Assembly (NCBI GenBank): GCA_021613535.1
Contig: CP075492.1
Location: 5,084,001-5,148,000, forward strand
Direction: 5' to 3'
Source of the DNA: Adineta vaga
Taxonomy: Eukaryota; Animalia; Rotifera
DNA length: 64,000 bases
Every line of letters begins with the position of its first letter. Position 1 is the stretch's first letter. Below the pieces are notes generated by a model that was not told the DNA's origin, did not search any database, and saw only the letters and a list, made by a program, of their open reading frames with translations. Below are positions 1,076-57,032 of this stretch, piece by piece. The position numbers were made by a program, and so were the translations under genes.

Positions 1076-4000
1076 ATGTTCTATATAAAATATATCTTTT
1101 TCATCCATTGTACTATGGCAATACCACAAATAAATCTTTATTTTACAACGAATGAAGTCACTGAACATGAATATAATGATGCAATAGGTATACGTTACAA
1201 TTGTTTTCGTCTTTCTTCAAATATGGATCAAGCAAGTCTTACTCGAGAAATTACATCTTATTGTCTAAGTGAACCATCAACAAAATTTCCTATTACAAAT
1301 GATATATCATTACAAATCTATTCTTTTTCAAATCTTGCGAAACAGAATGTAACAAGTGAAGAATTATATCGTTGGTCAACATCAATTGATATCATTGAAC
1401 AATATCAAATCTATTTAGAATCAAATGATCCATTATTAGCAAGAGAAATCTTCTATAATTGTACATTACCAAGATTTGGACCAATGTGTCAATATGAATT
1501 ATACTATTATTATGAGAATTATTCAACGTTATATGAAATGATTCATGCTTATTATGAAATGTATCCATATAATCCAACTAACTTGACTTGTTATGTTCAT
1601 CTAAAATGTAATCGTGGTTATTCACCAGCATGTTTAGATTGGACAGAAATTTGTGATGGTAAACTTGATTGTCTTGATGGAGAATACGATGAAGAACATT
1701 GTTGGCAACTTGAATTTAATGAATGTCAACAAAATGAATACAAATGTACAATTGGACAATGTATACCTAAGGAATTTGTTCAAGATGATTTAAAGAATTT
1801 TGATTGTATTGATAGATCGGATGAAAATTCACGATTTCTTCATAGTTATGAAAGATCTGATAAACATGAACCGGCGTTTGCATTTGAAGATGTTACATGT
1901 GAAAGTACATTTCTAACAAGTTCTTGTATACAAATACGACATTATTTACTATCACAATCGATGTTTTCAATTAAAGATAATTCTGTCTCAGATAAATGTT
2001 GGTCAGCTTTAAAATGTTATTTTGCTTTATCATATAAAAATGACTCCGAAATTACTAACGATATTATCGACAATGATTGTATACCTACTATGAAAGAAAC
2101 TTGTCCAGATATGTTATATGTTCCAACTATTCCAACATTCTTTAATCATATTTATACAGTTTACAAGAAGAATGATTTACCATATATTAACAATTATATT
2201 CTACCTTATTTATGTTCGAACAAATCTTTTTTCAGTGTTGGATCACTCGATCTAGTTCTTGATTTGTCAATGAAAAATACAACTTGTTTTAAGATATCTC
2301 ATTCATCAAACATAATGATGAGTAACATACCTGATTGGTCATCCCGATATCAGATGTCTATGGAAAGTATATTCCAACAAATAAAACAACTCGAACTAAT
2401 AACTAATTTTCCTCACAATCGATGCAATGAATCCAATGTGTATCAATGTAAGAATTCATTGAAATGTATATCATTTCATCGTTTAATGAATGGTATATCT
2501 GATTGTCCTTACAATGATGATGAAAATATATTTGAAGAAACAAATCTTGAGTTATTCGAGAAATTAAAATTTCAATATTATCAATGTTATTTTACCGGTA
2601 AATACATACCTCAATCAGCAATTTTAAATACAAAGTGTGATTGTGGTCGACTTGAAAATTTCTTTTGTGAAGATGAAAATGAAATCGAAAACTTTACAAA
2701 ACGAACTGTATCATTTCAAACTATTTGTGATGGTTTTCAAGAACTATATCCTTTGATGATTGATGATAAAAATGAAACAGATGAAACAAAATGTGAACAA
2801 TGGGAATGTGATAATATTTATACTCATTGTGATGGAATATGGAATTGCTTATACGGAGAAGATGAAATGAATTGTAATTCATCACCAGTGCTATTGAATT
2901 GTTCTTCGGATCAACGACTATGTGTAACAAGAAATACATCAGAATTAACATGTTTATCAATCAATAAAATAAATGATGGTATAGTCGATTGTCTTGGTGG
3001 TACTGATGAACAAAACTTATGTCCACCAACAGTTATATATAGAGAAAGAAGATTTTATTGTATGAACAAACATCCTTTGAGATGTCTTAAATTTCTTCAG
3101 TTATGTAATGGTTATGAAGATTGTTTATATGGAGATGATGAACAATTTTGTCAAAAAAATCGAACAATGTCAATGTATAATAGTATTTGTAAACCTGAAT
3201 ATTTATCGTTAGCTTCGGATGTTGAAAAATTTCTCTGTAATGCTTCAACGAGTGAGAACTATAAAGCAACAGTTAAATACTTTACAATTAATAGATTTCA
3301 TGAATCATTTCACAATGAAATAAATGACAATCAACAACTTAATGTGATAACTTTAGATGATTATAAACCAATTCCATTATTAGATAATCCTCGTTGTCAT
3401 CGTGGTCTCGATGTACGTATTTGGTTGAATAAATCATCGAATATTTATACAAGTGGATGTCTTTGTCCACCAAGTTATTATGGAAAACAATGTCAATATC
3501 AAAATCAACGTTTAAGTTTATCCATTCGATTTCATGCATCTGTTCAATCAAGAAAAATTCTATTTCTAATCTTAATTTTACTTCTTGATAATACAAATCA
3601 ACAAATTATTCATTCCTATGAACAATTTACTTATTTATCAATACGAGATTGTAAAATGAAATTTAATATCTATTTACTCTATTCAACTCGACCCAAATAT
3701 ATGAATAGAACTTATTCAATACATATGAATATTTATGAACAACATTCTTTACAATATCGAGGAAGTTTTTTCTATGCATTAAACTTTCTATTCTTACCAG
3801 TTCATCGTTTAGCATTCATTGTAAATATTCCATTCGAAAATAATTATCAAATTTGTTCGAATAGGAAATGTTATCATGGAAAATGTATAAAATATTTCAA
3901 TACAAAAGAAACATTTTGTCTATGTGAACAAGGATGGTCTGGACAACATTGTCATATACCATTTAATTGTACATGTTCATCGAATTCATTATGTATCGGT

Positions 4001-5830
4001 ACATTAAATAATCATCGATCAATATGTATTTGTCGAGAGAATTATTTTGGTTCTCAATGTTATATTCGAGATCGAATATGTGATAGAAATTCATGTGAAA
4101 ATAATGGCTTATGTATTGCGCATGATGATTTTATGTTGTCAACAAATCAAAACTATTTTTGTATTTGTCCAAAAGGTTTTAGTGAAAAACAATGTCAACG
4201 AAATGATACTCAAATTAATTTAGTTTTTGATAAAAATCTGTTTCTATCACATTCAGTTTTCATTCATTTTATTACAATTATTCCATTGAATCCATTTGCT
4301 TTTCGTATGACCAAATCTTCACCACAACGATTGACGACTTTACAAACAATATCTCAAGCAACGAATACTTTAAGAATATATTGGTCACAACCGTTTCATC
4401 TAGTTTTTATTGAAACATTAGATAAAACATTTTATTTAACTATTACACAGTCAATTTATAATTATTCAAGAATGATAACAAAAACAATTGATTTAACACA
4501 TCGTTGTCCATCAATAAATGAATTAGTGAGTAAAACTTTTGCTCAACTTCATCTACTTCATCGTATAAAATCTTATCATTTGATTTGTCAACAATATTCA
4601 CCGAATTTATCATGTTTTCATGATGATATTCATTTTTGTTTATGTTATGATCATCAAAATAAACGTTTAGCCAATTGTTTTCAATTCGATCATCACATGA
4701 AATTTGATTGTTTCGGACGAAACGAATGTGAAAATGATGGACAATGTTTTCAAGATTCACCTGATTGTCCTAAACGATCGATTTGTATTTGCCGTTCATG
4801 TTACTATGGAAATCGATGTCAATTTACTACCAGTGAATTTGGCTTATCACTTGATGCTATTTTAGCTTATCATATCATTCCCGATGCGAATATTTCTCAT
4901 CAAACATCAATTGTCAAACTTAGTTTTTCATTAACGATTCTATTTATAATTTTAGGATTGATCAATGGAATTCTTTCATTCTTAACATTTACAAGTAAAC
5001 GTATACTTAAAGTTGGCTGTGGAATATATTTATTAAGTTCATCAATAATAACAATCTTAATAATGATTTTATTTGGATTAAAATATTTTATTTATCTTTC
5101 AACACAAATATCAATATCATCGAATGAAGTATTTTTCAAAATTCAATGTTATTCATTAGATTTTCTTCTTCGAATTTGTCTTAATATGGATCAATGGTTA
5201 ACAGCATGTGTTGCAATGGAAAGAGCAATAACAGTTATTCAAGGTGTTAATTTTGTCAAAGATAAAAGTAAACGATTGGCAAAAAAGATTATAATTATTC
5301 TTTTAATAGTAATTATATTAACAGCATTACATGATCCTATACATCGTCGTTTGTTTCAAGAAGAAGATAATGAGAATGAGAATATGAGAAGAATCTGGTG
5401 TATTGTAAGTTATTCGACAAATTTACAAATTTATAATCGAATTATAAATACATTTCATTTCCTTATTCCATTTTTTATTAATTTAATTTCATCAATTATT
5501 TTAATTACAAAAAAATCTCATCGACAATTACGTTTTCAACGACATCGATCTTATAAAGTCATGCTACGTGAACGAGTTATAGATCATCGACATTTGTTAG
5601 CTGCACCGATTATATTATTTATTCTTGCATTACCACGATTATCTCTTTCTTATGTATCGAAATGTATGAATTCGTCAAAAGATGCTTGGATATTTCTTTT
5701 TGGATATTTCATTTCATTTATTCCATCAATGATTACTTTTCTTATCTTCGTTTTACCATCGCAATTTTATAGAAAAGAATACCGAAGATGTTTTATTGAT
5801 CGATCAAACACCATTCATCCGGCTCATTGA
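1076..5830 (+). CDS. Large intronless LDLa/EGF-repeat 7TM (rhodopsin-class) receptor
   Basis: Continuous ORF; first ATG at 1076 (track start is TTG); multiple LDLa repeats (CDGKLDCLDGEYDE, CDGIWNCLYGEDE), EGF repeats (CLCEQGWSGQHC), C-terminal 7 hydrophobic helices with ERA in the DRY position. Confidence 0.85.
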   Translation: MFYIKYIFFIHCTMAIPQINLYFTTNEVTEHEYNDAIGIRYNCFRLSSNMDQASLTREITSYCLSEPSTKFPITNDISLQIYSFSNLAKQNVTSEELYRWSTSIDIIEQYQIYLESNDPLLAREIFYNCTLPRFGPMCQYELYYYYENYSTLYEMIHAYYEMYPYNPTNLTCYVHLKCNRGYSPACLDWTEICDGKLDCLDGEYDEEHCWQLEFNECQQNEYKCTIGQCIPKEFVQDDLKNFDCIDRSDENSRFLHSYERSDKHEPAFAFEDVTCESTFLTSSCIQIRHYLLSQSMFSIKDNSVSDKCWSALKCYFALSYKNDSEITNDIIDNDCIPTMKETCPDMLYVPTIPTFFNHIYTVYKKNDLPYINNYILPYLCSNKSFFSVGSLDLVLDLSMKNTTCFKISHSSNIMMSNIPDWSSRYQMSMESIFQQIKQLELITNFPHNRCNESNVYQCKNSLKCISFHRLMNGISDCPYNDDENIFEETNLELFEKLKFQYYQCYFTGKYIPQSAILNTKCDCGRLENFFCEDENEIENFTKRTVSFQTICDGFQELYPLMIDDKNETDETKCEQWECDNIYTHCDGIWNCLYGEDEMNCNSSPVLLNCSSDQRLCVTRNTSELTCLSINKINDGIVDCLGGTDEQNLCPPTVIYRERRFYCMNKHPLRCLKFLQLCNGYEDCLYGDDEQFCQKNRTMSMYNSICKPEYLSLASDVEKFLCNASTSENYKATVKYFTINRFHESFHNEINDNQQLNVITLDDYKPIPLLDNPRCHRGLDVRIWLNKSSNIYTSGCLCPPSYYGKQCQYQNQRLSLSIRFHASVQSRKILFLILILLLDNTNQQIIHSYEQFTYLSIRDCKMKFNIYLLYSTRPKYMNRTYSIHMNIYEQHSLQYRGSFFYALNFLFLPVHRLAFIVNIPFENNYQICSNRKCYHGKCIKYFNTKETFCLCEQGWSGQHCHIPFNCTCSSNSLCIGTLNNHRSICICRENYFGSQCYIRDRICDRNSCENNGLCIAHDDFMLSTNQNYFCICPKGFSEKQCQRNDTQINLVFDKNLFLSHSVFIHFITIIPLNPFAFRMTKSSPQRLTTLQTISQATNTLRIYWSQPFHLVFIETLDKTFYLTITQSIYNYSRMITKTIDLTHRCPSINELVSKTFAQLHLLHRIKSYHLICQQYSPNLSCFHDDIHFCLCYDHQNKRLANCFQFDHHMKFDCFGRNECENDGQCFQDSPDCPKRSICICRSCYYGNRCQFTTSEFGLSLDAILAYHIIPDANISHQTSIVKLSFSLTILFIILGLINGILSFLTFTSKRILKVGCGIYLLSSSIITILIMILFGLKYFIYLSTQISISSNEVFFKIQCYSLDFLLRICLNMDQWLTACVAMERAITVIQGVNFVKDKSKRLAKKIIIILLIVIILTALHDPIHRRLFQEEDNENENMRRIWCIVSYSTNLQIYNRIINTFHFLIPFFINLISSIILITKKSHRQLRFQRHRSYKVMLRERVIDHRHLLAAPIILFILALPRLSLSYVSKCMNSSKDAWIFLFGYFISFIPSMITFLIFVLPSQFYRKEYRRCFIDRSNTIHPAH

Positions 5831-6334
5831 TTTCATACTTTTATTGAAAGTGCACATTGAAAAACAGAATAACATACGATACTAAAAATCTTTGAAAAAT
5901 ATTGATCTCTGTAAGACTATCTTCTCTATTTCTATATGTGTGTCAACTTTTAAACATTTTTATTTTTGGATTGTTTTATCCTACAGAAATCATATTATTA
6001 CAGGAAATACATCAATATATAGCGTGTCAAATACTCGATCGATATAAACTTACGAATGTCATTTCATTTTCACGATTTTTTTCTAAATCTAAACGTACAC
6101 TTATGACACACAACGATAAAAGTGCTGCTATAATCATGTTTGTGGAACTAATCTTTCTATTATATTCTTTATATCTGCCTATCTATCTTTCATACGCAAG
6201 ACTGCGGTGTATTTATTTAATTTGTTTATAAAAGAAAAAAGAAAAAAAGAAAAGTTGCCATTGCATTTTCATACATAACATAAAGAGTGATTTTATATTC
6301 TTATTCAATTCATTAAACAAAATCATATATTTTT

Positions 6335-8830
6335 ATGACAATGTCTGATCATGATGACGAACAACTTCGAATTTTACTAAGATTTATTTTGCATCTCAAT
6401 GAAGTCAATCAAGATTTACGTCGTTTGGTCTGTGATATTGAAGATGATAAAACATCAATTACAGCTGTTTGTCGTTATTATGAAGCATTCAATGAAATAC
6501 AGATGATGATAACATCGGGACCAAGTCTTAATTTAGTTGATTATCTTGTTGAATTAGATCGTTTAGATGATGCTCATCGATATTTCAAACAAATACATGA
6601 TGAAGATCAGCATAGACGTTCGGGACAATTGTATAATATTGGTTTGAAGAAACTGATCGAAGAAAGTGATGAATTAATCATGTTTCACAGTATTCCACTA
6701 AATTCCGATGATTTACTTGAATTATCAAAATCAACAACATATCAACCTATAAACCCTGAAGAAATGCAAGGTATTGGAAAATTGAATGCATTTCAGTCGA
6801 TAAAATCACGTGAGATGATTTGATTCTATTCTAGAATCGAGTCTAAGTGCATTTCGAATTATCTTCGATTGGTTTAAAGAACACGGTTATCAACAAGGTT
6901 TGATCAATCTATATGCGACTAAAAGAGGCAATATGATTTGCAGTTCACTAAAATTGTATATATATATATATCTTTATTAATTGTATCTTTCATTTTCTTA
7001 AAGATTAGGAGAATATTTAGCAAAGAAATCTGTTCGTCGTGCATCAATCAACTTGTTTACTGTTAGTCCTTGTCTGTCTTCATCTCGATCTTCTCTCAAT
7101 GGTGATATGATACGAGAACATATGAAAACACAATTAATGTATTTTCGCTTTTTTTAAAATTATTATTTCGATATGTCTTACATGAAGTAAACTGTTTGTT
7201 TTTTTTTCAGTCGATTAGGACATCGTATAGCACGTTCACCGGTATTTGGTAGTCGTGATACATCATCACGAAGAAATTCATTATTAGTACCTCCAAAACC
7301 TCACGAAGAGGAGAATACAATTAATGTTGATGGCATCGCTTCATCGATACGTTTCAGCAACGATCAAGAAGCCAACCGATATAAATATTTACTCGATGCA
7401 TTCGTTATTCTTCTTTTACGTGATGTTGACTTACTGTTCTATGTTTTCGAAGCAGAATTCAAATCGATAATTCTTCACAAATTAATCGAAATACCATTGA
7501 CCTATCTATACGAAGAAGCAAAACAACTTTGTAAAGCTATTAATGAATTAACAAATAAAATTTATCATGGAAAATTTGCATTTTATTCTCTTATTTCTGT
7601 TATTCGATGGTTTTATCGATCTAATCCACTTCTTACTCAGTTTTATCAAGTAAGATGACTTTTATGCTTAGCAAAGAATCGTAAAAATTACGAAAAGAAA
7701 GTATTCTGTTTATTCATAGGAAAGTGATCTAACATTATCACAACAACAATTCACGAATACACTCTTAACACTTTTTGAAAATTCAGTAAGAAGTTGAAAT
7801 AAAATCGAATTTTATTTGATTACTTTTTTTGTAGTTAATGGAATATCTTCGTCTGATTCTGAATGAAATTCAAAATGAATCATCACCAATAAGTTCAAAT
7901 TGTCAAGTACATTCATTAACGGTACATGTATTCGATTATATGGAAGATTATTTGAACTATGAAAGTATTATCACTACTGTTCATAAGAATCAAAATAGTA
8001 TTGTTCCATCGTGTATTTATATGGGTGAGTGTAGAGTTCTTATTTTTACTTCTAACGTCTCTTCTATTGGCATTGATTTCAGGTGAACTTTATCGAATAC
8101 TTTGTAGGAATATTTTTGAAAAAAGACCCGAATCTATTGTATATGATGATAGTGTTATTCGGGCAATATTTCTTCTCAATAATACCACTTATATTTTTAA
8201 ACGAATCGAAAGGTATGAAAAACATACGATCTTCATCTAAATATGTTTTCTTTTTTGTATTGAATTATCTCTTAGTTCATCTTTATTATCGATCATGGAA
8301 CTCATACATCCCAATCTAAAATCTAATATTGAAACTTACATTGAAAAAAGTATCAAAATCTATATGAAATGGTATATAATTCTATTTGAGATTTCTGTTC
8401 GAACAATGATCTTTTCTATTCATATAGTTGTTCGCCGATAATCACTGCTATGCAACAAATGTTTCATTATGATGACTTACATCATCTTCCAAATAATCAA
8501 GTAAATAAATAAATATGTATTTCAATTCTCTTCATAAACAGTTCTTTTTTTTCACAGTTAAAAGATTCTGATCGTAGTCAACTGAAGAGTAATTTTTTAA
8601 TGGTCAACACAGCTATTGATACATTTCGTCGACAGAATCAATCCTATGTTATCGATGATTCTCAATTACGCGATCGATTACGATCAGAACTTAAGACAAC
8701 CATATTAGATATGTTTACGAAATATTATACAAAATTTGCATCGAAAAATTTCACTCATCATCCAGAAAAATATATTCGATATAATCCGTCAACATTTAAT
8801 AATTTGATTGAACAACTTTTTGAAGATTGA
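6335..8830 (+). CDS. EXOC7: Exocyst complex component 7 (Exo70)-like, multi-exon, copy 1
   Basis: Exo70-type motifs: VHSLTVHVFDYM, IFLLNN, LRDRLRSELK, FTHHPEKYIRY; short GT-AG introns join the ORF pieces. Confidence 0.8.
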
Positions 8831-47368: not shown

Positions 47369-48526
47369 TACTTTTTGAGGGTGTGGGTAATGGTGTGGAT
47401 GAGAAGGAATTTTCTTACAGCATGCAGGAAAAACAAAATAATTTTAATTTGCCCATATGGGATTTTCAATTGCCCTGAATTTCAATTTTCCCTGTAACAT
47501 ATATATATATATATATGCTTCACATATTATATGAAGAAATATGAATAATAACAAATGAAACTTAAATCAATGTAATATTAGTAAATTGATGATCTATTTG
47601 TAGTCATGAGCAAGAATCCGTGTTTGACGGATATTTCGGTAAGTTAAATATCTAAAGAACGATGTTATTGTAACTGGAACAATTGAGATTAAAAGAAGAA
47701 TATATAGTGATAGGTAAATAGTATATCCAGAATTGATAGATACACATGCATTACGATCATTCTAATTGACTATAATGACGACGACGAACATGCTTTGACG
47801 TTATTAAAAAGTGATTAGAACTATATTAATGAGAGAATATGTTCGTACTTTACACAAAAAATATTTCCATATTAGTGAGATTAATACAATATCCAAAATT
47901 TATAATACGAATAGTAACGTTTATATAAATATCTAGAAAACATTACAAATTGATCCAGTAGAAAAATAGAATGAACAAAGATTTATATGATAGATACGCA
48001 TACTTGAAACTATAAAAATATTCAAGCCATTACCAATAAGTTCCAAGATAATAATGAAAATATCAACATATATTGTCAATTGTTGGCTAATGTCTGACAA
48101 AGACATGATTTTGTACTATTATAAACAACTGTTGCTTATCAAAGATTAAAGAAGAACAGGAACGCGATATAATATCATAAATGTGCAAAGAAAAGAATCA
48201 AAGAATATGTTGCACGAAATACTATAATTTTATCAGAAAACAAGGTTGCGTTCTTAAACAGAAGAAAAACGAGTCAATTAAAAAATCTTTAATGAATTAT
48301 TTTTACGGTTATTACGTTATAGTTTAATGATAAAGGACGAAAAATAAAATGGAAGAAAAAGCAATTATAAAGCGAAATGAATTGTAATTGGGGATGTGGT
48401 TATGATGAAATCGCAATGGTGACTGTGAATATGTGTTGCTCACTCAAGTTTTCTTTGACAGACTCACATTAATTCATTCGGCTCTAGAAAGATTATCTCA
48501 AAGTAAATTTCATGTATCCATGTTTG

Positions 48527-51459
48527 TTACTTTTTAGTAAATCGATTTTTATTTTTGTTTTTAAATCGTGCTGATCTGTGTTTCTTTTCTTCAGCTGGAC
48601 CAGTATTGATACAAGAGAATACCCGGCAGAAGTTGCTTTTGAACGAATTAGTTTTTATACGTGTTTTTAGTAGCTTTTCATAATGTGAATGTGTCTTTGA
48701 ATACGTTTTCATTTTGGCATAGAACAAGCCAATGCTACTGAAGGAATTAGTCAGATTGAGACGATTTTGTGCAAGAATATCTTGACATATGTTCGATGAT
48801 AGTTTGAAACGCGAAAGTGCTCTGCAATAGCTTCCTATTTTGATCAATACTTGATTCAAGCTACCGTGCTGTAAGTTGACCAGCGAATAGTACGAACGAA
48901 GAGCTTTGAAGCGAGTGATAAGCGCTGTTCCCGAAATAATCATCGCTGTCGAATAGTTACAGATTTGTCTATATTTTGAAATGGAGACTTTTTGATAAGT
49001 CGGAGATGCAAACAAATGCGGAGAGCTATTACTTTTCCACAATTCTATCGATAATTCATTGGAATTCGTGGAATTTAAATGTTCTTGTGCCGTATTATAG
49101 ACATAATCGTATTTGGATGCATTCAGCGAGTATAAGTTCTGTGAGTAAATATCGATACGATCTTTCAAACTATTGTAAGAATTTATTTTTGATAGTAACT
49201 CATGTAAGTTTGTTGTCTTCTCTAGCTCGTCCATGTCGGGCATGGATGAGCAAAGTTGACGGCATTTCATCATTTCTTCCTCTCTATATGACTCTGTATG
49301 ATACGCGAAACATTTGTTATAATTGTTAACAAAAGTGAGATACACTATCCATAGTCGACTGTTGGAACGCTTTATTTTGTCTATGCGAAAATAACACGTA
49401 GAGAATCGAGACTGCAGCTAGCGCTTTTCGCAAATAAATATGCAACTTTTCGATTAGTGGAAATTGATAGAAACTCGTTCATCGATATAAGATTACCGAT
49501 ATTTGCTTTTAATATTTTATTAAGTGATGGGTAGGTAAATCCTTCTCTTGTACACCAGCATAATGATTCTGCATGTATATAATCAAATTGGAATCTAAGA
49601 AGCATACATGGGTACTCTTCTTCGTTATTAAAAGATCGATCGCATGGATCGACTAAATCTTGTTTAAATCTGTCTTTACATTGCACTGTATGCATCATGG
49701 TTTTACAAAGTTCTGTGAAGATACTTACGATTCCATTGAAAGAATATAAAATTGCATTTGATTGTAAAAGTATCGCAGCTCTTCCTTTGAACTGACATTT
49801 ATACTCCATAAAAGGAAAATCGATTAACAAATCACATTTATGAAACATCACGTCATCGTTATTAAGTGTTTGTATTTCAATCATTGACTTATATCTTTTC
49901 AACCAATTTAAACTGTGTTCATATACTTCACATGATTTCTGTTGAATTGTATAGGCATTCAAGACAGTTGTTGGTTTAAATAGATACAACATTTTCAGTG
50001 GTTTTTCATTAGGCTCGAAACAGTCTCTGATAACTATATATATATATATATATATATTAAAATAAACATGCAATAAGAATATAAGAGACTGTACGAGAAA
50101 ACTTTACTCACCAGTATCTAATACTTCAGCTTTTCGTTTGGTTCGACACTCTTGTGATTTGTGAAAAAAATTTGATGCTTTATAAACAGGCATAAAATCG
50201 GATAATCCGAAAGTATCCCATAATATAATATCATACTGACCGACTACTACACAAGCTAATCGGACAGTATTAGGTACATGATCCGACGAATGAAGCTTCT
50301 TGGCCTTAATTAAAGGAAGTGTATGGAATGCAGAGCCAGATATCAACTTGTAGTTTTGCAGTTTAGTTGACATTTTTAATGATAACCTAAGACGAAAATA
50401 ATTTAAAGTACAGAGTGATATTTTTGATCTTACTTGTATGTCCCATTTTTAGTCAATAATGATCGATTGATATTGAGACGAAGTGGATTACAACGTGTCC
50501 AGTTGGATTAATATTACCGTCGAAAAATCCACTTTGAGTATCTAGATACCATATCACCTTTTCATCAACAAAGCTTTCTGATACAATTGCGACTAGCAGT
50601 TTAATATGATCTAGTTGCGAAACTGTTGACGGTAGCTGAAAAATCAAAAGAATATTTGTCAAAAGATTCATTTTACATACAGGCTATCCTCGAAAATCTT
50701 CCTTTCCTGTATTTATATGGACAGTGTTTTTAAACATGATTAGAACCTAATTTTGTACAATACAGCTAATATACTTTGAAAAAAGATGTCTTACTTTAAT
50801 TTCCGGTAAGACACCAACATACTTTCCATCGCGTATTTTTTTAATACCATGTATAGGCATTACATAGCTGTCATGTATAATGTCTAAATTGCTCGTAACC
50901 GTACAAAAATCGACAAATTGTTGTTGCAACTGCTGATAAAGAATAACATCACGTACAAACATCACATGATGCGACCAGTAATCTTGATTTACATGTTCTA
51001 GCTGCGCGCTGATTGAAAGTGGCCGATTATCGCCGGAACATATATTAAAATCAATGCTTGGCGTGGCTGGCCTATGTTCTTCTGATACAGACATGCTGAG
51101 TGATACAAAATCATCATAATCTTGGAAAAACAAACAGAATACTACTCGATAAACAGAAGCAGTAAAAACCTACTAAACCGGGCAACGTTTTCCATCTCTG
51201 TTACATTTTGAAGTAAAACTCTCACATGAAGTTGTTTCTTGTGTGTTATCGGCAATATATGTCGAAGTTCTTCAACGTACTCATCATCGAAATCGATAAA
51301 TCTCTGATACCGTTGGTCATAAACTTCAAGTTCAAACGAATTTTCGTTAATTTCGAAGAATAACATAATAGATTCCATTATTTCTTTGAGCGACATCGAT
51401 GTATTAAGTAGTAGCACATCGGATTTATTTGAATATTCGACAGTTAGATTGTATTGCAT
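48527..51459 (-). CDS. Multi-exon gene: FxDFDxEY N-terminal domain, Rel-homology-like region and degenerate ART/TPR-like tail (tail probably decayed)
   Basis: Exon peptides FIDFDDEYV; GVLPEIK|LPSTV..LLVAIV; TVRLACVVVG..ILWDTFGLS; YPSLNKILK-ANIGNLISMNEFLSISTNRKVAYLFA (ART-like); stop at 49381 splits the tail. Confidence 0.55.
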
Positions 51460-51862
51460 TTTATACAAAGTAAGTTTATTTTCACTCTCAATATTTTCGT
51501 ACCTTAGCAGGAAAAATGAATAAGCATTATGTAGAGATGTCATATAATGGTTAGTTGTGTTTTATCGAGAAGAACAGCAAAAAAAAGGTGCTTTCACTTT
51601 TCCGACCACCGTTGACTTTTTTCAACCTCAGTCAACATCTTACAACCACTGTTGATTTTTTCCTACCTATATTGAAGTATCTCAACTCTATACTGTTTGT
51701 TACACACACCTGTGTTCTTTTTCATTCTATTGATTTTCTAATGTCTATGAATGTTTGCTTTGTATGTTTCTTTCTTTCGACCTATGTTGGAATTTTTCAA
51801 CCATAGAACTGTTATTTGAATTAAAAATAATAAATTTAAAAATCAGAATAAGATATTGAGGT

Positions 51863-54800
51863 ATGAGTGTGGAGACAACTGTTCATGCGTTATTTCAATA
51901 TGTTGATTTGAACGGCAGAGATAGAACAAAGAAAACAAATCAATTCAATTATCAGACGCGATTAGATAACATCCTACACTGGATTTTGACATGGTGGAAA
52001 GGTCGTACAATTTCTCATATAGAAATTAAAGACACTTCCAATCACTTTGTTGATTTTGACGAAGAGTACATAAAGGAACAAAATCCATTCTTTGTATCTG
52101 AATCGACAGTGATTTTATTCCGAGTCATTGTAACACGTGGTAAATTGTAAATCTTAATTTTTGATTTGATTTGATTTTATATACTAACAGATAGTACATC
52201 AGAATCGAATAGAAATGCTTTTCAAGAACCATCCGATAGAACTGTTTCTTCTAGGGTGCTTCGAAAACTTCCGGAACGTAAGATAAATGTTAAATATAAT
52301 TGTTTAATCCTGTTTTCTCATAGCTTCAGCTTCGATTTCTGAGCGATCAAGTGCTGAAATTGTAGAACCAGCTGAAGAAGATAAATTTTCTTTCTTATCT
52401 GCGCCAAGTGCAGTTAAAATAAACGATACAAATCCTTTCATAATATTTACTAAGAACGTAAACGACAAACAACGTGATCAATATGAAACTGATAAAACGA
52501 AAGCAGCAACAGGTGATCGAAGAGGCTGTTTTGTACGAATACAAGGCGACAAAAGTGGTTTCAACAAAAATGATACTCATAAAGCTGTTGCCCCCATGAT
52601 AAAAGTGAGTGTAACTTATGAAGTTGATTTATGTACGATTTGAACTGACCTGAACAATGTCATGTACATCATCATTTTTGAATCTATCATTATTGATGAA
52701 ATTATAGAGAAAAAAAGAGGTAAAGCATGAAATGATTGAGTAATTCACTTATCGACGGTGAGTCATCTTTTCTTTTCTCGTTATCTACGTTAGTTAATCT
52801 TTGTTTTTATTTTTTGAGTCTCTCTTTAGTAAAGAAATAATCAGTCGAAATTGTTTTGAATAAAAAGTTGGAAACACGTGTTCTATATCAGGCGTAAGCA
52901 ATATCAAAAGATTACATATGAATCAGTAGACTCTCCTGCATTTGTATTTATTAAGTATGCACTCTCATCTAGATTACCTGAGTAGCTGAATACTTAATGC
53001 CAATGTAGACCTGAGTCTGAGTCTGGATAATAAAGCCACGAATGGTTCAAACCTATTCACTCGCGCCTTCACCCTCGAAATAGTCAAAAAGCATAATGAT
53101 TTCTTCTTTTTTGATAGATTTGCGAGCATTCCATACCTAAAATAGAGAGAACGAAATGGGTTCTACTTGTTTTCTTGTTATACGAAATCTGCGAGAATGG
53201 TGTCCGTAAACTTTTCCATAACAAGGAACGTCAATTGATAAGCAATCTTACTAACAATACAGTTTCATCTAATTCAGACGTGAATATTAGAGCATCAACA
53301 GTGATACAAGATGAGTAAGTCTCAATCTTTCCATTTTCTCATGTTTTTCCGTCGGCACCTTTAGAGTTGACTCACGTGGAAAACCAGTTATTCTACAACT
53401 AACTGATGAAATGTTTAGTGAAGTTGGCGAAAAGTTAGTAAAATCATTCTGATCATATTTAATTAGTTTGCTCTTTAATAGGCTAGACTTGAAACATAAA
53501 GTTGTCCTTCGAGCAAAAACGTGTTCTGAAAAGAAAACACAGTTATTTTGCGAATTGAAAAATCAATACCCTAAAAACATGAACTACGAAACAACTCGTA
53601 TAGGCTGTTTGCTGGTGCATGATGGTAAAGAAATGTGGGAAGACTTGACGCTTTCAAAATCGATGATCTTTCCTAGTAACTCTTCTTCCTATGATTGCGT
53701 CATTGTATTTATTTTTGTAATTATATTTTTAGAATCAAACGATACGATCGGAGATATAGACATCATAGTTAATGATAGATTAATCGAAACTATAACTGTT
53801 CGAATGATGAAACGTAAACCAGACTTAAACACATCCGGTATATGTTTTTTTTACTAGACGCATTTGGATATATATATATGAATATGAATATTCTTTGCAA
53901 TAATATTTAGAAACAATAGTCAAACGAAACCCCGTTAATGCTAAACGTCAAAAGAATGTACGATCGATGGATATACGAAATTCACAAACTGACCAATATA
54001 ATCAAAACCATAATGACAGCTCAACATCTCTTGCTCCGGAACAATCCAATAATAGGAATTGTGAGAATATGTATTTACAGCATGACTGTGCGGCGTCGTT
54101 CCATCCAATCGTGAATGCTACGAACTCTTCGGTAAGTAATACATTCGAAAACCATTTCAGTTCAAGACTAAACGGAATCATTTTAAATGTGAGTATAGCA
54201 GCAAAGCAATGTTAAGATGAGTTTCTATAAAGACGTATACTATAATACTGGCACATTTACGTAACAGATTTACTATTTTCAGTGCGAAATGATTCCGCCT
54301 TCAATGAACAACAACTATACGTATAATATATTACAAAGCGAATCATCGACGGCAGCAATACACTCATACAATCATCCTTTATATGAAAATAATGATCAAG
54401 TAAGTGTTCCTAGATTATATACGTTCAGCAAGTTCTTCAAAGATTCGCCATAGTAACTGTTGTACATCTATAATCATGTAAATAAAAAAAAACTGAAGGA
54501 TTAAAAATATCAAGTTACATTAAACCGTCTCGAAAAATAAATCAAGATTATTTGTAGTTTTGATGGACATATATTTGATTTGACTATTTGACCAATCGAG
54601 GAAAGATTAGAATATATATAGAACGAAATATTATTTTCATAAATTCTTTATATAAGGCAATGAATACACTCTGATTTTTATTGCATAGGAAAGATCAACG
54701 ACAACCACGTTAATTTGTCCATCTATGACAAATAATGAAAGTTTTTCCAACTACTTAACATTCGATCAGCAACCAGTTTTGCCAGTCTCAACGATGCCTT

Positions 54801-54985
54801 TACCAAATTTTCACAGTTCATTCACTCAAGAATTATGGAACACTTCATTAGTGGTTTGTCTTTCATTTAAATACAAAACCAATCTGAATTTTGTGCTTTT
54901 TAGAACGAATATATTTCAAATTTCGAAATGGAAAATACCAAATTCGACGATATTCACTCACACGATGATGTACAATGACGTCTAA
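51863..54985 (+). CDS. Multi-exon gene: FxDFDxEY N-terminal domain, Rel-homology-like region and low-complexity tail; apparent frameshift near 52500
   Basis: FVDFDEEYI; QRDQYETDKR...VAPMIK|ICEHS..VLLVFLL; YETTRIGCLLVHDGKEMWEDLTLS; many short GT-AG introns; 3' end approximate. Confidence 0.55.
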
Positions 54986-55449
54986 ATTCAAAATATCGTC
55001 TCCTTTTAGGAAAGACATCTGCTAATTGAAATCATTTTCTTGTGTCATATTTTTGGTTACTATTCTGCAGAAGGAGATATTTTTCATCTCTTTTAAGTTT
55101 CACTTAATTAAATCTTCACTTTATCATTGACGAAATCAAATACATATTTGTTTTGTTCATTTTTCGATCATACTCATGAATATCGTGTGTGACTATATAG
55201 ATCAACAAGTAAAATTAAAATATTTATATTGAAACAGATCTCGGATTTTCTACATAGTCTTCGTTACATCAATTTATACTTTAATAGAAAAATATGCTTT
55301 TGTCATTTTGATATCATTGCGCATGACAAGTTTCTTTTCCACTCAAACTCACTTCCGTATATATCTGGTTACGACAACAAGTACATCCTGTGGAATTTCT
55401 TCTTTTCTCTTCACTTCAAACATCCATTTACATTCGAGTGTTAACAACG

Positions 55450-56460
55450 ATGGCATCCTACAATAATTCATCACAAATCAATGATATTTCATATACTATT
55501 CCTTCTTTCGAAACAGTTCATTCACGAATGATTAAATTCATCCTTCTACTTCTATTTCAATTGCTATCTATCACTTGTTCACTCTTTCTTCTATTTCATT
55601 TGATCAAAAAACCCACACTTCATCGTGCATTACATAATCACACCCTCATCGCATTGGTCATTGTCAGTTTCTTTCAAACCATATCCGATCTACCGATGAC
55701 CTTAGACTATTTACGCATGGGTCAAGCATCATCTTCAATCTTTTGTTTATTGTGGAATTTCTTTGCACTTTCAAACTATGCTGTGGGTGTTTGGATTATG
55801 ACATGGGCGTCGTTTGAACGACACCTACTAATCTTTCATGAACGTTTGACAATTACATCTCGTGGTAGAATTCTCTATCATTACATACCATTATTAGTTT
55901 CTTTCGCTCTTCCTTGGATCTATTATGTGATTCTGATTTTCTTCTACCCATGTACAAATACGTTCTATCCAACATTTCTCTTCTGTGGTTGGTGTTGTTA
56001 TGCATACAATGATCAATTAGTGTTTTTCAATTGGATGATGTTTGGTGTTATTCCAACATGTTTGATCAGTTTATTTTGTGTTTGGTTAATTCTTCGTGTT
56101 ATTGCACATAAACGACGTGTACAGCAACGAATCAATTGGCGTCAACATCGTCGAATGACGATTCAGTTGCTGAGTATTTCGAGTCTCTATATCTTTTTCG
56201 ATGCTCCCACTGTCATTATCGGTTTAGTTCGATTAGGACTGCCGACATTTGGTAATGAAATTCAAATTCTGTATTTATTTTATATTGTATATCTTTTACC
56301 AATACTTGTTCCGTTTGTTTGTTTGAGCACTCTACGAGAACTATGGTCTGGAAAACAAACTCAAATTCATCCAACCAGACAATTTACGCAGAATCATACA
56401 ACTGGGCGCACTGATCAACCTGATCTAAGAACGCGTTTTCAACAAATAACTAAAGTATAA
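55450..56460 (+). CDS. Orphan rhodopsin-class GPCR, intronless
   Basis: 7 TM, LHNH, WASFERH, RRMTIQL, PFVCL. Confidence 0.88.
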   Translation: MASYNNSSQINDISYTIPSFETVHSRMIKFILLLLFQLLSITCSLFLLFHLIKKPTLHRALHNHTLIALVIVSFFQTISDLPMTLDYLRMGQASSSIFCLLWNFFALSNYAVGVWIMTWASFERHLLIFHERLTITSRGRILYHYIPLLVSFALPWIYYVILIFFYPCTNTFYPTFLFCGWCCYAYNDQLVFFNWMMFGVIPTCLISLFCVWLILRVIAHKRRVQQRINWRQHRRMTIQLLSISSLYIFFDAPTVIIGLVRLGLPTFGNEIQILYLFYIVYLLPILVPFVCLSTLRELWSGKQTQIHPTRQFTQNHTTGRTDQPDLRTRFQQITKV

Positions 56461-57032
56461 TGAGATAAAACGACATGGAATATTAATCAATTATCTTTAC
56501 GTTTGATACGCTACAGTTCAATGATAGAAGAGGAAAAATTAAGAGAGAAGAAAAATAAATTATTTAGTGGTATATTATACTCATATGCGTCCTAAGGGAA
56601 TCCCTATCTTATGAAAACATGTTGTGCGTCTGTCGATGTAAATCAAATTTACAAATTTATAAAAAGATATTAGATTTTCTTTGTATTCTACACATGCTTT
56701 TGCTGTTCAATAAATAATCATTAAAACGAAATGATATAGCCATTTTTAGGTATTTTCATTATGTCTTGTTCAAAGATTCTAACAATGATTGTAGTCATAT
56801 CACTGACATGATAATTATAATGGTATTTATCTAAAAAAAATATTTGCTATCAGTGGCGTTTCACGATAAATTCATTCACATTGATAGCTAACTTGCACAC
56901 GTTTATCACACATGTTAATTGGTTATTCAACTGTTTATGTTGCGTCCATATACCCTTTTCTTTTTCTTTGTATATATAAGCAATGAATAAATTTTCATCA
57001 ACTGAAGGACAATACACAGAGTTAAAACAAAT

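What the first reader, a model, noticed from the sequence alone, without database searches (positions are those of the whole stretch)
48527..54985. Head-to-head pair of distant paralogs with a shared N-terminal motif and a Rel-homology-like domain, one linked to an ART-like tail
Seen: starts ~400 bp apart, divergent. Both genes show the same ordered motifs: FIDFDDEYV / FVDFDEEYI; LPEIK| / APMIK| followed by an intron at the same spot; LLVAIV / LLVFLL; VRLACVVVG..ILWDTFGLS / TRIGCLLVH..EMWEDLTLS. Established: Rel/NF-kB/NFAT domains have RxxYETEG/RFRYxCEG, PxVKI and VRLCF elements; here QRDQYETDK, PMIKICEH and TVRLAC echo them. Inference: an unannotated, highly diverged RHD-fold transcription-factor family under a bidirectional promoter, with a PB1/ubiquitin-like heterodimerisation domain and an ADP-ribosyltransferase-derived tail in one partner. 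This is the best candidate for an undescribed system in the window.
Basis: partly seen in the sequence, partly recalled or inferred. Interest (0 to 1): 0.8.

Follow-up and report, generated by a model that had tools for sequence, protein, structure and literature searches.

The report
Paired PB1–Rel-like rotifer genes
Two back-to-back genes of the bdelloid rotifer Adineta vaga are distant paralogs that each pair a PB1-type docking domain with a domain shaped like the DNA-reading half of NF-kB/NFAT; bdelloid rotifers of two genera keep this gene pair, so it is probably a new kind of Rel-like regulator.

Summary

- **The two genes.** Gene A runs 51459→50104 on the minus strand. Gene B runs 51863→54978 on the plus strand and has 11 exons, six of its introns confirmed by spliced RNA contigs. 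The start codons lie 320-404 bp apart.
- **Paralogy.** Pairwise similarity is near noise. Profiles of the two ortholog groups match at hhalign probability 97.6%, E 3.5e-12, over 295 columns, and three intron positions and phases are shared.
- **Folds.** AlphaFold models of an A-type and a B-type relative give an N-terminal PB1 fold (NBR1 PB1, Z 11.3). They also give a middle domain whose only strong matches among 48,161 PDB representatives are Rel-homology N-terminal domains (RelA, p52, p50, TonEBP; Z 9-11). Other p53-like folds reach only 6.3-6.5. A protein-language-model search independently points to PF00554. No HMMER search reaches RHD or PB1.
- **Conserved pairing.** The head-to-head pair recurs at three A. 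vaga loci, in A. ricciae and in two Rotaria species.
- **ART tail.** In this window it is an eroded ART-TPR remnant: the Arg-bearing segment is missing and it is out of frame. It is intact at the C6 paralog and fused in the A. ricciae gene model.
- **State of gene A.** In this assembly it is 1 nt short of an open frame.

The scan has already noted the same family at other loci of this genome.

The parts
51174..51459 (-). Gene A exon 1: PB1-like domain with an acidic OPCA-like motif. An alternative upstream ATG at 51543 was used in the GenBank models.
   Evidence: ORF. Orthologs start at the equivalent Met. The splice was read from the sequence and from P0066. PB1 fold of the ortholog P0014.
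50795..51120 (-). Gene A exon 2: disordered linker plus the first strand and loop of the Rel-like domain, ending in LPEIK followed by GT. The loop motif here is degenerate (QLQQQ in place of R-x-x-Y).
   Evidence: Weak match of C6 paralog. The A7 profile does not hit this exon.
50434..50635 (-). Gene A exon 3: core strands of the Rel-like domain. The assembly is 1 nt short near 50498-50502 compared with GenBank alleles, so the frame breaks and a TGA follows at 50453-50455.
   Evidence: Profile hit at 50441-50668 with one TGA inside.
50104..50386 (-). Gene A exon 4: last strands (TVRLAC...FGLSDF) and a basic patch, with the stop at 50104-50106. A consensus GTGAGT donor at 50111 would allow an in-frame splice to 50033.
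   Evidence: A7 profile hit E 1.6e-8.
49381..50033 (-). ART-TPR family remnant, part 1: pre-ART helical region, the W/Y-T..F.Y..LN motif and an STS-like block. The roughly 50 residues that carry the catalytic Arg in relatives are absent.
   Evidence: 114 genome-wide matches to residues 118-229. (aligns to C6 ORF residues 176-250, then 300-341). No Pfam hit.
48527..49417 (-). ART-TPR remnant, part 2: two to three decayed TPR units, in a different frame from part 1. There is no usable intron between the two parts.
   Evidence: 205 matches; E 2e-10 to the C6 TPRs; frames read from the sequence.
51460..51862 (.). Shared intergenic region between the divergent start codons; a putative bidirectional promoter.
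   Evidence: Arrangement conserved in six loci. No shared motif beyond A-runs and no kB consensus site.
51863..52140 (+). Gene B exon 1: PB1-like domain with a basic beta1-beta2 region plus the FVDFDEEY acidic motif.
   Evidence: An RNA contig covers 51844-52084. PB1/UBL fold of the paralog P0005.
52192..52604 (+). Gene B exons 2 and 3 (52192-52277 and 52324-52604): linker, first strand and the loop motif QRDQYETD, ending in APMIK followed by GT.
   Evidence: Splices agree with the GenBank model P0003/P0068. Profile hit E 7.6e-5. Motif alignment.
52605..53117 (+). Gene B intron 3, 513 nt, unusually long for this genome. The public gene models stop inside it.
   Evidence: No Rfam family.
53118..53837 (+). 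Gene B exons 4-7 (53118-53314, 53365-53433, 53482-53675, 53733-53837): core and last strands of the Rel-like domain (TRIGCLL...LTLSK), followed by a beta-hairpin.
   Evidence: GT..AG joints in RNA contigs of runs X1, X8 and X9. Profile hits E 9e-6 and 2.2e-13.
53911..54978 (+). Gene B exons 8-11 (53911-54131, 54283-54399, 54689-54853, 54904-54978): a basic NLS-like patch, then a low-complexity tail rich in N/Q/S/T with an acidic end.
   Evidence: Joints 53838-53910 and 54132-54282, and the loose end at 54404 that continues at about 54689. The last 50-nt intron is predicted from the sequence only.

Best explanation
The locus holds one member pair of a small bdelloid-rotifer family of about eight genes in A. 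vaga. Each protein has an N-terminal PB1 domain, a disordered linker, and a single domain with the fold of the N-terminal (DNA-specificity) half of the Rel homology region. The C-terminal IPT/TIG dimerisation half is absent.

Most likely mechanism (inferred): the two paralogs are co-expressed from the shared promoter. They dimerise front-to-back through their PB1 domains. A-type has only the acidic OPCA-like face, and B-type has a basic beta1-beta2 face as well. The PB1 contact would replace the missing IPT dimer interface and bring two Rel-like domains together on DNA.

The B-type partner looks like the active transcription factor. It keeps an R-x-x-Y-x-[S/T]-[D/E] motif, an NLS-like basic patch and a long low-complexity, acidic tail.

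In Adineta, the A-type gene lies upstream of an ART-TPR module on the same strand. In the A. ricciae gene model it is fused to that module, which would tie the pair to that large family. In this window the A copy is eroded: the loop motif is lost, there is a 1-nt frame break, and the ART-TPR remnant has no catalytic-Arg segment. Here gene B is therefore probably the only fully functional partner.

Shown: paralogy, predicted folds, conserved pairing, splicing of B, and decay of the tail. Inferred: DNA binding, PB1 heterodimerisation and the regulatory role.
For: - **Paralogy:** hhalign 97.6%, E 3.5e-12.
- **Models:** pLDDT above 90 in both domains of both models.
- **PB1 fold:** NBR1 PB1 Z 11.3 with rmsd 2.0 over 81 residues; MEK5, Par6 and p40phox PB1 at Z about 10; Foldseek E 4e-4.
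- **Rel-like fold:** RelA/c-Rel Z 11.0 and 10.6, p65 N-terminal domain 10.8 and 10.2, p52 10.1, TonEBP 9.4 and 10.0, p50 9.3 and 9.0. The next p53-like folds (RBPJ, VosA/VelB, p53) score only 6.3-6.5. The top Foldseek hits are NFAT and NF-kB.
- **Independent support:** ESM feature search gives only PF00554 clusters at the top, scoring 0.90 with 181 shared features for A-type and 0.87 for B-type.
- **Loop motif:** conserved in all B-type sequences.
- **PB1 charge pattern:** A-type has 0-3 K/R in beta1-beta2 and net -4 to -8 in the OPCA-like stretch; B-type has 2-6 K/R.
- **Pair conservation:** found in Adineta and Rotaria.
- **Expression:** gene B is spliced in RNA contigs from two studies.
- **Tail:** A. 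ricciae has a fused 1247-aa model, and in-frame GT-AG paths exist at C3 and C6.
Against: - No sequence-level match to RHD or PB1 in Pfam or PDB. The fold evidence rests on predicted models with about 20 informative sequences.
- Structural alignments cover 140-165 of about 200 residues at rmsd 3.5-4.6 A.
- I could not obtain a residue-level superposition, so equating the R-x-x-Y motif with the Rel recognition loop rests on my own knowledge of Rel sequences.
- The motif is not conserved in several A-type proteins and is lost in this window's gene A.
- There is no kB-like site or shared motif in the intergenic regions.
- No RNA contig lies on gene A, although a gap in contig coverage does not show that the gene is silent.
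- The link to ART-TPR and receiver-like partners could mean a signalling role rather than a DNA-binding one.
Confidence: 0.5

Rival explanations
1. The Rel-like domain is used as a protein- or ligand-binding module rather than for DNA binding. The PB1 pairs would then be adaptors in a lineage-specific signalling or conflict (immune-like) system built around the huge ART-TPR family.
For: - A-type is followed by, or fused to, an ART-TPR module in Adineta.
- At the C4 locus the PB1 domain is fused directly to the N-terminal domain typical of ART-TPR proteins, and that gene is paired with a Rel-like gene.
- Divergence is very fast: 37% identity between the C3 and C6 copies.
- The loop motif is variable in A-type.
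- PB1 domains are classic scaffold modules.
Against: - B-type proteins keep the R-x-x-Y-x-S/T-D/E motif, carry NLS-like basic patches and have long low-complexity, acidic tails typical of activators.
- Rotaria A-type proteins have no ART-TPR tail.
- The closest folds are all DNA-binding domains.
Confidence: 0.25
2. At this particular locus the pair no longer works as a pair. Gene A together with its ART-TPR tail is a decaying copy (a pseudogene, or at most a truncated decoy), and only gene B is functional, acting alone or with the C6 A-type partner.
For: - There is a 1-nt frame break in exon 3 relative to two intact GenBank alleles, and the exon lengths sum to 1097 nt, one short of a multiple of three.
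- The loop motif is replaced by QLQQQ.
- The A7 profile misses exon 2.
- The ART remnant lacks the Arg segment and its two halves are in different frames.
- No RNA contig lies on A, while B is covered and spliced.
- B-type PB1 has both acidic and basic faces.
Against: - The frame break could be an assembly error, because both Sanger-era alleles are open.
- The remaining exons are open and 98-100% identical to those alleles.
- Contig data cannot show absence of expression.
Confidence: 0.35
3. The resemblance to RHD and PB1 is convergent or an artefact of structure prediction. The genes would then be lineage-specific orphans with a generic beta-sandwich and a ubiquitin-like domain, unrelated to Rel proteins.
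For: - No HMMER-level similarity.
- Foldseek E-values are only about 4e-3.
- ESM scores of 0.87-0.90 lie in a range that shuffled proteins sometimes reach.
- For B-type, PB1 and other ubiquitin-like folds tie at Z 7-8.
Against: - Two separately predicted models, of distant paralogs but from largely the same family alignment, each put six different Rel-family chains at the top of an unbiased search of 48,161 chains, 2.5 or more Z units above other p53-like folds.
- All ten best named ESM clusters are PF00554 in both queries.
- For A-type, PB1 domains rank above generic ubiquitin-like domains.
Confidence: 0.1

Closest known systems
Rel homology region of NF-kB/Rel/NFAT/TonEBP (N-terminal DNA-specificity domain, Pfam PF00554)
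   Same: The predicted fold of the middle domain matches (Z 9-11 to RelA, p52, p50 and TonEBP). A loop motif R-x-x-Y-x-S/T-D/E sits after the first strand, and a VRL.C...S..I-type last strand is followed by a basic patch.
   Different: There is no detectable sequence-profile match and no IPT/TIG dimerisation domain. A PB1 domain sits in front. The family is restricted to bdelloid rotifers and is arranged as divergent gene pairs. The loop motif is lost in some A-type members.
PB1-domain scaffolds (p62/NBR1, Par6-aPKC, p40phox-p67phox, MEK5-MEKK2/3)
   Same: The predicted beta-grasp fold has PB1 domains as best matches, an acidic OPCA-like stretch at the beta3-beta4-alpha2 position, and a basic beta1-beta2 region in one partner.
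   Different: No Pfam PB1 hit. The acidic motif is D-F-D-[DE]-E-Y rather than the canonical OPCA sequence. The domain is attached to a Rel-like domain, a combination I know from no animal protein (my own knowledge; one literature search found nothing).
Plant ARF-Aux/IAA and NLP transcription factors (a DNA-binding domain plus a PB1 used for oligomerisation)
   Same: Works alike: a transcription-factor DNA-binding domain whose pairing or oligomerisation is delegated to a PB1 domain. This comparison rests on my own knowledge and is an analogy only.
   Different: The DNA-binding domains (B3, RWP-RK) and lineages are unrelated. The PB1 is C-terminal in the plant proteins, and they have no paired-gene arrangement.
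Bdelloid ART-TPR proteins (arginine-type ADP-ribosyltransferase PF01129 plus TPR_12 repeats)
   Same: The stretch 48527-50033 is a diverged member. The C6 paralog's 975-aa ORF has ART (26 bits, above the cut-off) and TPR_12 (366 bits).
   Different: In the window the Arg-bearing segment is missing, only 2-3 TPR units remain, and the two halves are out of frame. It is a remnant, not an enzyme.
Other Rel-like beta-sandwich DNA binders (CSL/RBPJ, fungal velvet, p53)
   Same: They share the same broad p53-like/s-type Ig architecture.
   Different: They match clearly worse (Z 6.3-6.5 against 9-11 for the Rel family).

Membership tests
Rel homology domain (RHD_DNA_bind, PF00554) | Significant match to the family's sequence profile | tested here: not met
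   No PF00554 hit at E up to 1-10 on the window exon pieces, on 10 full-length relatives or on the 9 domain segments. The domain profile finds no PDB chain.
Rel homology domain (RHD_DNA_bind, PF00554) | N-terminal s-type Ig / p53-like beta-sandwich that superposes on RHD-N | tested here: met
   Tested on predicted models of relatives, not on the window proteins themselves. Z 11.0/10.8/10.5/10.1/9.4/9.3 for A-type and 10.6/10.5/10.2/10.1/10.0/9.0 for B-type, all to Rel-family chains; the next fold class scores 6.5. The window exons match the family profile exon by exon.
Rel homology domain (RHD_DNA_bind, PF00554) | Recognition-loop motif (R-x-x-R-x-R-Y-x-C-E-G in NF-kB, R-x-x-Y-x-T-E-G in NFAT; from my own knowledge) | tested here: inconclusive
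   R-x-x-Y-x-[S/T]-[D/E] is present in all B-type sequences, including window gene B (QRDQYETD), and RMRYKSD is present in the C4 gene. It is absent in window gene A. I had no residue-level structural alignment to prove that the positions are equivalent.
Rel homology domain (whole region) | C-terminal IPT/TIG dimerisation domain (PF16179) | tested here: not met
   A-type proteins end 20-30 residues after the domain. B-type proteins have only a beta-hairpin and then a low-complexity tail. No Pfam hit.
Rel homology domain (whole region) | Sequence-specific DNA binding | not testable with these tools
   Needs EMSA, PBM or DAP-seq.
PB1 domain (PF00564) | Significant match to the family's sequence profile | tested here: not met
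   No Pfam or PDB sequence hit.
PB1 domain (PF00564) | Beta-grasp fold closest to PB1 domains | tested here: met
   A-type: NBR1 PB1 Z 11.3 (rmsd 2.0, 81 residues), with MEK5, Par6, p40phox, Cdc24 and MEKK3 PB1 at 9.8-10.4, above generic ubiquitin-like folds. B-type is weaker: NBR1 PB1 at 7.8 ties with other UBL folds. The ESM Atlas shape search lists PB1 proteins.
PB1 domain (PF00564) | Acidic OPCA motif and/or conserved basic residue(s) on beta1-beta2 | tested here: inconclusive
   An acidic D-F-D-[DE]-E-Y stretch sits at the beta3-beta4-alpha2 position in both types. The basic beta1-beta2 region occurs only in B-type. The canonical OPCA sequence is not matched.
Arginine ADP-ribosyltransferase (ART, PF01129, R-S-E type) | Profile match and R / S-T-S / E-x-E catalytic elements | tested here: not met
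   The window stretch 49381-50073 has no Pfam hit. It aligns to the C6 ART around, but not across, the segment holding the Arg. The C6 paralog itself passes PF01129 at 26.2 bits against a cut-off of 22.3.
TPR repeats (TPR_12 type) | Repeated 34-42-residue helical hairpins matching TPR profiles | tested here: inconclusive
   The window stretch 48527-49345 gets only TPR_NPHP3 at E 0.022, below the cut-off. It matches the C6 TPR units by BLASTP at E 2e-10 and 205 places genome-wide. These are remnants of 2-3 units.

The most novel reading that the evidence does not exclude
Bdelloid rotifers have no canonical Toll receptors (PMC6043800), and this genome showed no canonical RHD signal (a weak negative). 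They may therefore have replaced NF-kB/NFAT with an obligate PB1-coupled heterodimer of single-domain Rel-like proteins. In Adineta, one partner would be physically fused to an ART-TPR sensor or enzyme module, giving a one-step sensor-to-transcription-factor (or DNA-targeted ADP-ribosylation) pathway of innate defence or stress response.
Probability: 0.15. Interest if true: 0.85.

Novelty: new variant of a known kind. Interest (0 to 1): 0.66.

Why it matters
Rel-homology factors (NF-kB, NFAT) are central to animal immunity and stress signalling, and as far as I know they always dimerise through their own IPT domain. This family has only the DNA-specificity half, joined to a PB1 docking domain, and is encoded as conserved divergent gene pairs. 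That would be a different structural solution to Rel dimerisation.

Almost nothing is known about immune signalling in bdelloid rotifers, so this would also be a first handle on it. The link to the enormous ART-TPR family suggests how that expansion might connect to gene regulation.

The idea is directly testable with PB1 interaction assays, DNA-binding assays and expression profiling after pathogen challenge or desiccation.

Tried and rejected
- **Pfam on exon pieces and relatives:** only noise.
- **Profiles against PDB sequences:** searches with the domain profile and the family profile found nothing.
- **Direct A-versus-B tblastn and a 3-sequence A-type profile:** no significant link. Only ortholog-based profiles showed it.
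- **Word-index protein searches:** they added only 2-3 relatives each.
- **Canonical RHD in the genome:** PF00554 in six frames and back-translated RFRYxCEG and RAHYETEG patterns gave no hit. The Pfam control rang nowhere, so this is only a weak negative.
- **Intergenic motif search across six loci and kB-site scan:** nothing beyond A-runs.
- **Rfam on 47500-56500:** nothing.
- **Neighbours of the A. vaga records through the contig index:** not on record.
- **An intron to reconcile the two frames of the ART-TPR remnant:** rejected, because no GT..AG pair keeps the frame open.
- **Joined proteins not used:** The folds were made on database relatives (P0014, P0005:1-375), with the window exon pieces included only as separate alignment rows.
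- **Reads limit:** the one read-laying run went to RNA-type runs, so I could not check the 1-nt frame break against DNA reads.
Full report
**Source and scope.** The window is G000:C3:5084001-5148000 of a 100.8-Mb assembly in six contigs. A paralog protein carries the name 'hypothetical protein I4U23_031399 [Adineta vaga]' on a contig of the same length as C6. The organism is therefore the bdelloid rotifer Adineta vaga. The window was searched exon by exon by reference, and the folds were made on database relatives.

**Anatomy of gene B (plus strand).**
- The ATG is at 51863.
- The 11 exons are 51863-52140, 52192-52277, 52324-52604, 53118-53314, 53365-53433, 53482-53675, 53733-53837, 53911-54131, 54283-54399, 54689-54853 and 54904-54978.
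- They sum to 1788 nt, which gives 595 codons plus the stop.
- Five introns appear as GT..AG joints in RNA-type contigs of runs X1, X8 and X9. A sixth shows as a loose end at 54404 that continues at about 54689. A contig of a second study covers exon 1.
- The last 50-nt intron is predicted from the sequence only.
- The public models (ACD54629, and I4U23_012264 at 227 aa) stop inside the unusual 513-nt intron 3.

**Anatomy of gene A (minus strand).**
- It most likely starts at the ATG at 51459, which aligns with the Met of all orthologs.
- The exons are 51459-51174, 51120-50795, 50635-50434 and 50386-50104.
- Two GenBank alleles from 2008 (ACD54630 = P0001, ACD54654 = P0066, 421 aa) correspond to it at 96-100% identity, but they retain part of intron 2.
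- Compared with both alleles, the assembly is one base short near 50498-50502. The frame shifts and a TGA follows at 50453-50455.
- The four exons sum to 1097 nt, one less than a multiple of three.
- I cannot say whether this is an assembly error or a real mutation.
- No RNA contig lay on gene A, which does not prove that it is silent.

**Are A and B paralogs?**
- Directly, the evidence is at noise level: E 0.015 for the FIDFDDEYV/FVDFDEEYI block and E 1.1 for the VRLAC block. A three-sequence A-type profile did not reach B-type genome-wide.
- A profile of the N-terminal domain searched against 1.84 billion representatives found 61 proteins. Two of these are bacterial repeat proteins that I discount. 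Every hit that carries a name is from Adineta or Rotaria, and none has a Pfam domain.
- Alignments of the A-type group (11 sequences) and the B-type group (9 sequences) match each other at hhalign probability 97.6%, E 3.5e-12. The match covers 295 columns, running from the N-terminal domain to the last strand.
- Three intron positions and phases coincide: after the N-terminal domain (phase 1), after PEIK/PMIK (phase 0), and at K|L before the last strands (phase 2).
- The paralogy is therefore real.

**What the domains are.**
- AlphaFold2 models were made for the A-type protein P0014 (Rotaria sp., 367 aa) and the B-type protein P0005:1-375 (the C6 paralog of gene B). Each has two confident domains (most blocks above pLDDT 90) joined by a disordered linker.
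- In an exhaustive alignment against 48,161 PDB representatives, residues 1-85 of the A-type model match PB1 domains best. NBR1 scores Z 11.3 (rmsd 2.0, 81 residues). MEK5, Par6, p40phox, Cdc24 and MEKK3 score 9.8-10.4, above generic ubiquitin-like folds.
- The middle domain (about residues 153-354) matches only Rel-homology N-terminal domains at high Z:

| PDB match | A-type Z | B-type Z |
|---|---|---|
| RelA/c-Rel | 11.0 | 10.6 |
| 2o61 chain A (NF-kB in the interferon-beta enhancer complex) | 10.5 | 10.5 |
| p65 N-terminal domain | 10.8 | 10.2 |
| p52 | 10.1 | 10.1 |
| TonEBP | 9.4 | 10.0 |
| p50 | 9.3 | 9.0 |

- For B-type, structure-based identity to the NF-kB chains is 16-20% (8% to TonEBP). 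The next p53-like folds (RBPJ, VosA/VelB, p53) reach only 6.3-6.5.
- Foldseek gives the same families at modest E-values: PB1 at 4e-4 and p65/NFAT at 4-5e-3.
- A language-model feature search is independent of the models. It puts only PF00554 clusters at the top for both domains: 0.90 with 181 shared features for A-type and 0.87 for B-type.
- Against this, no HMMER search links the family to RHD or PB1. Membership of the Pfam families is therefore not met, and the claim is one of fold and probable remote homology.
- The window's own exons match the family's domain profile piece by piece. For gene B the E-values are 7.6e-5, 9e-6 and 2.2e-13. For gene A they are 8.2e-4 and 1.6e-8.

**Details that bear on mechanism.**
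- After the first strand, all B-type proteins carry R-x-x-Y-x-[S/T]-[D/E]. Window gene B has QRDQYETD and the C4 gene has RMRYKSD. From my own knowledge this resembles the Rel/NFAT recognition loop.
- Several A-type proteins have lost this motif, and window gene A reads QLQQQ there.
- None of the proteins has an IPT/TIG dimerisation domain.
- A-type PB1 domains have an acidic D-F-D-[DE]-E-Y stretch (net -4 to -8) and almost no basic residues in beta1-beta2. B-type PB1 domains have the acidic stretch plus 2-6 Lys/Arg in beta1-beta2. This fits a front-to-back A-B contact, which is an inference.
- Gene B continues with a basic patch and a long N/Q/S/T-rich, acidic tail.

**Conserved pairing.**
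- The divergent A/B arrangement recurs in A. vaga on C6 (A-type at L033 8204 on the minus strand, B-type from 9406 on the plus strand).
- It recurs on C4, where a PB1 fused to the N-terminal domain typical of ART-TPR proteins faces a Rel-like gene.
- It also recurs in A. ricciae, in Rotaria magnacalcarata with 600 bp between the starts, and in Rotaria sp. Silwood2 with about 410 bp.
- Further members are a B-type pseudogene on C1 and two tandem genes on C1, for about eight genes in all.
- The intergenic regions share no motif beyond A-runs and have no kB consensus site.

**The ART tail.**
- The stretch 49381-50073 (residues 118-229) and the stretch 48527-49345 match 114 and 205 places in the genome. 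These places belong to the large single-ORF ART-TPR family.
- The C6 paralog has an intact 975-aa ORF with PF01129 (26 bits, above the cut-off) and TPR_12 (366 bits).
- The window copy aligns to that ORF's residues 176-250 and then 300-341. The segment that holds the catalytic Arg is therefore missing.
- Only 2-3 TPR units remain, and the two halves lie in different frames with no intron that reconciles them.
- An in-frame GT-AG path from exon 4 (donor at 50111) to 50033 exists, and a similar path exists at C6.
- The A. ricciae annotation fuses A-type and ART-TPR into one 1247-aa gene.
- Rotaria A-type proteins end without any tail.
- The tail is therefore an Adineta-specific addition, and it has decayed in this window.

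**Context.**
- A review states that A. vaga has no canonical Toll-like receptors and that rotifer immune pathways have not been reported (PMC6043800).
- I found no canonical RHD signal in the genome. This negative is weak.
- I found no paper describing a PB1-Rel architecture.
- The scan had already flagged the same kind of pair at other loci of this genome (s1-484529 and s1-494562). Its follow-up reached the same reading, so this window adds another locus of one family, not an independent discovery.

**Verdict.** The locus holds a real, conserved, lineage-specific family with a new domain architecture: a PB1 domain plus a single Rel-like domain, encoded as divergent gene pairs. The transcription-factor and heterodimer mechanism is the best-supported reading, with confidence of about 0.5. 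In this window gene B looks intact and is expressed, while gene A and its ART-TPR tail look eroded.

Noticed in passing
window 55390-56460 (+): A single-exon ORF of 356 aa just downstream of gene B is a rhodopsin-family 7TM receptor (PF00001, 31.2 bits against a cut-off of 30.5).
   Followed up: partly
window 50034-50058: An (AT)n microsatellite lies inside the putative intron between gene A exon 4 and the ART remnant. The reads tool skipped 50026-50070 as a repeat.
   Followed up: no
L035 (G000:C1:14557000-14566999), about 4700-5750: A B-type paralog with in-frame stops (one TGA in the PB1 exon, others later) and no A-type partner. Upstream there are ORF fragments that look like a mariner-type transposase (my own reading, not tested), and downstream there is what looks like an NHL-repeat gene (my reading of the sequence, not tested).
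   Followed up: partly
L046 (G000:C1:4769000-4778999), 3086-4879 and 5776-7161 (-): Two further family members lie in tandem rather than head-to-head. Each has a PB1/UBL-like N-terminus, and the loop motif has Lys in place of Arg (QKNIY). This looks like a third subtype.
   Followed up: partly
L034 (G000:C4) 5799-6548 (-) and relatives P0002, P0035, P0036, P0047: Proteins of 249-327 aa join the A-type PB1 domain directly to the N-terminal 'VWLD...' domain that opens most ART-TPR proteins. That domain has no Pfam family.
   Followed up: partly
L033 (G000:C6) 1123-3546 (+): A second, separate ART-TPR gene (807 aa; PF01129 at 26 bits plus TPR_12) lies next to the C6 pair, so ART-TPR genes cluster around this locus.
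   Followed up: no
ESM Atlas cluster seen: A cluster of 133-aa 'hypothetical proteins', mostly from Rotifera, has PF00554 in 44% of its members. It may be a bridge between this family and canonical RHD, or a canonical rotifer Rel gene. I could not fetch its sequences.
   Followed up: no
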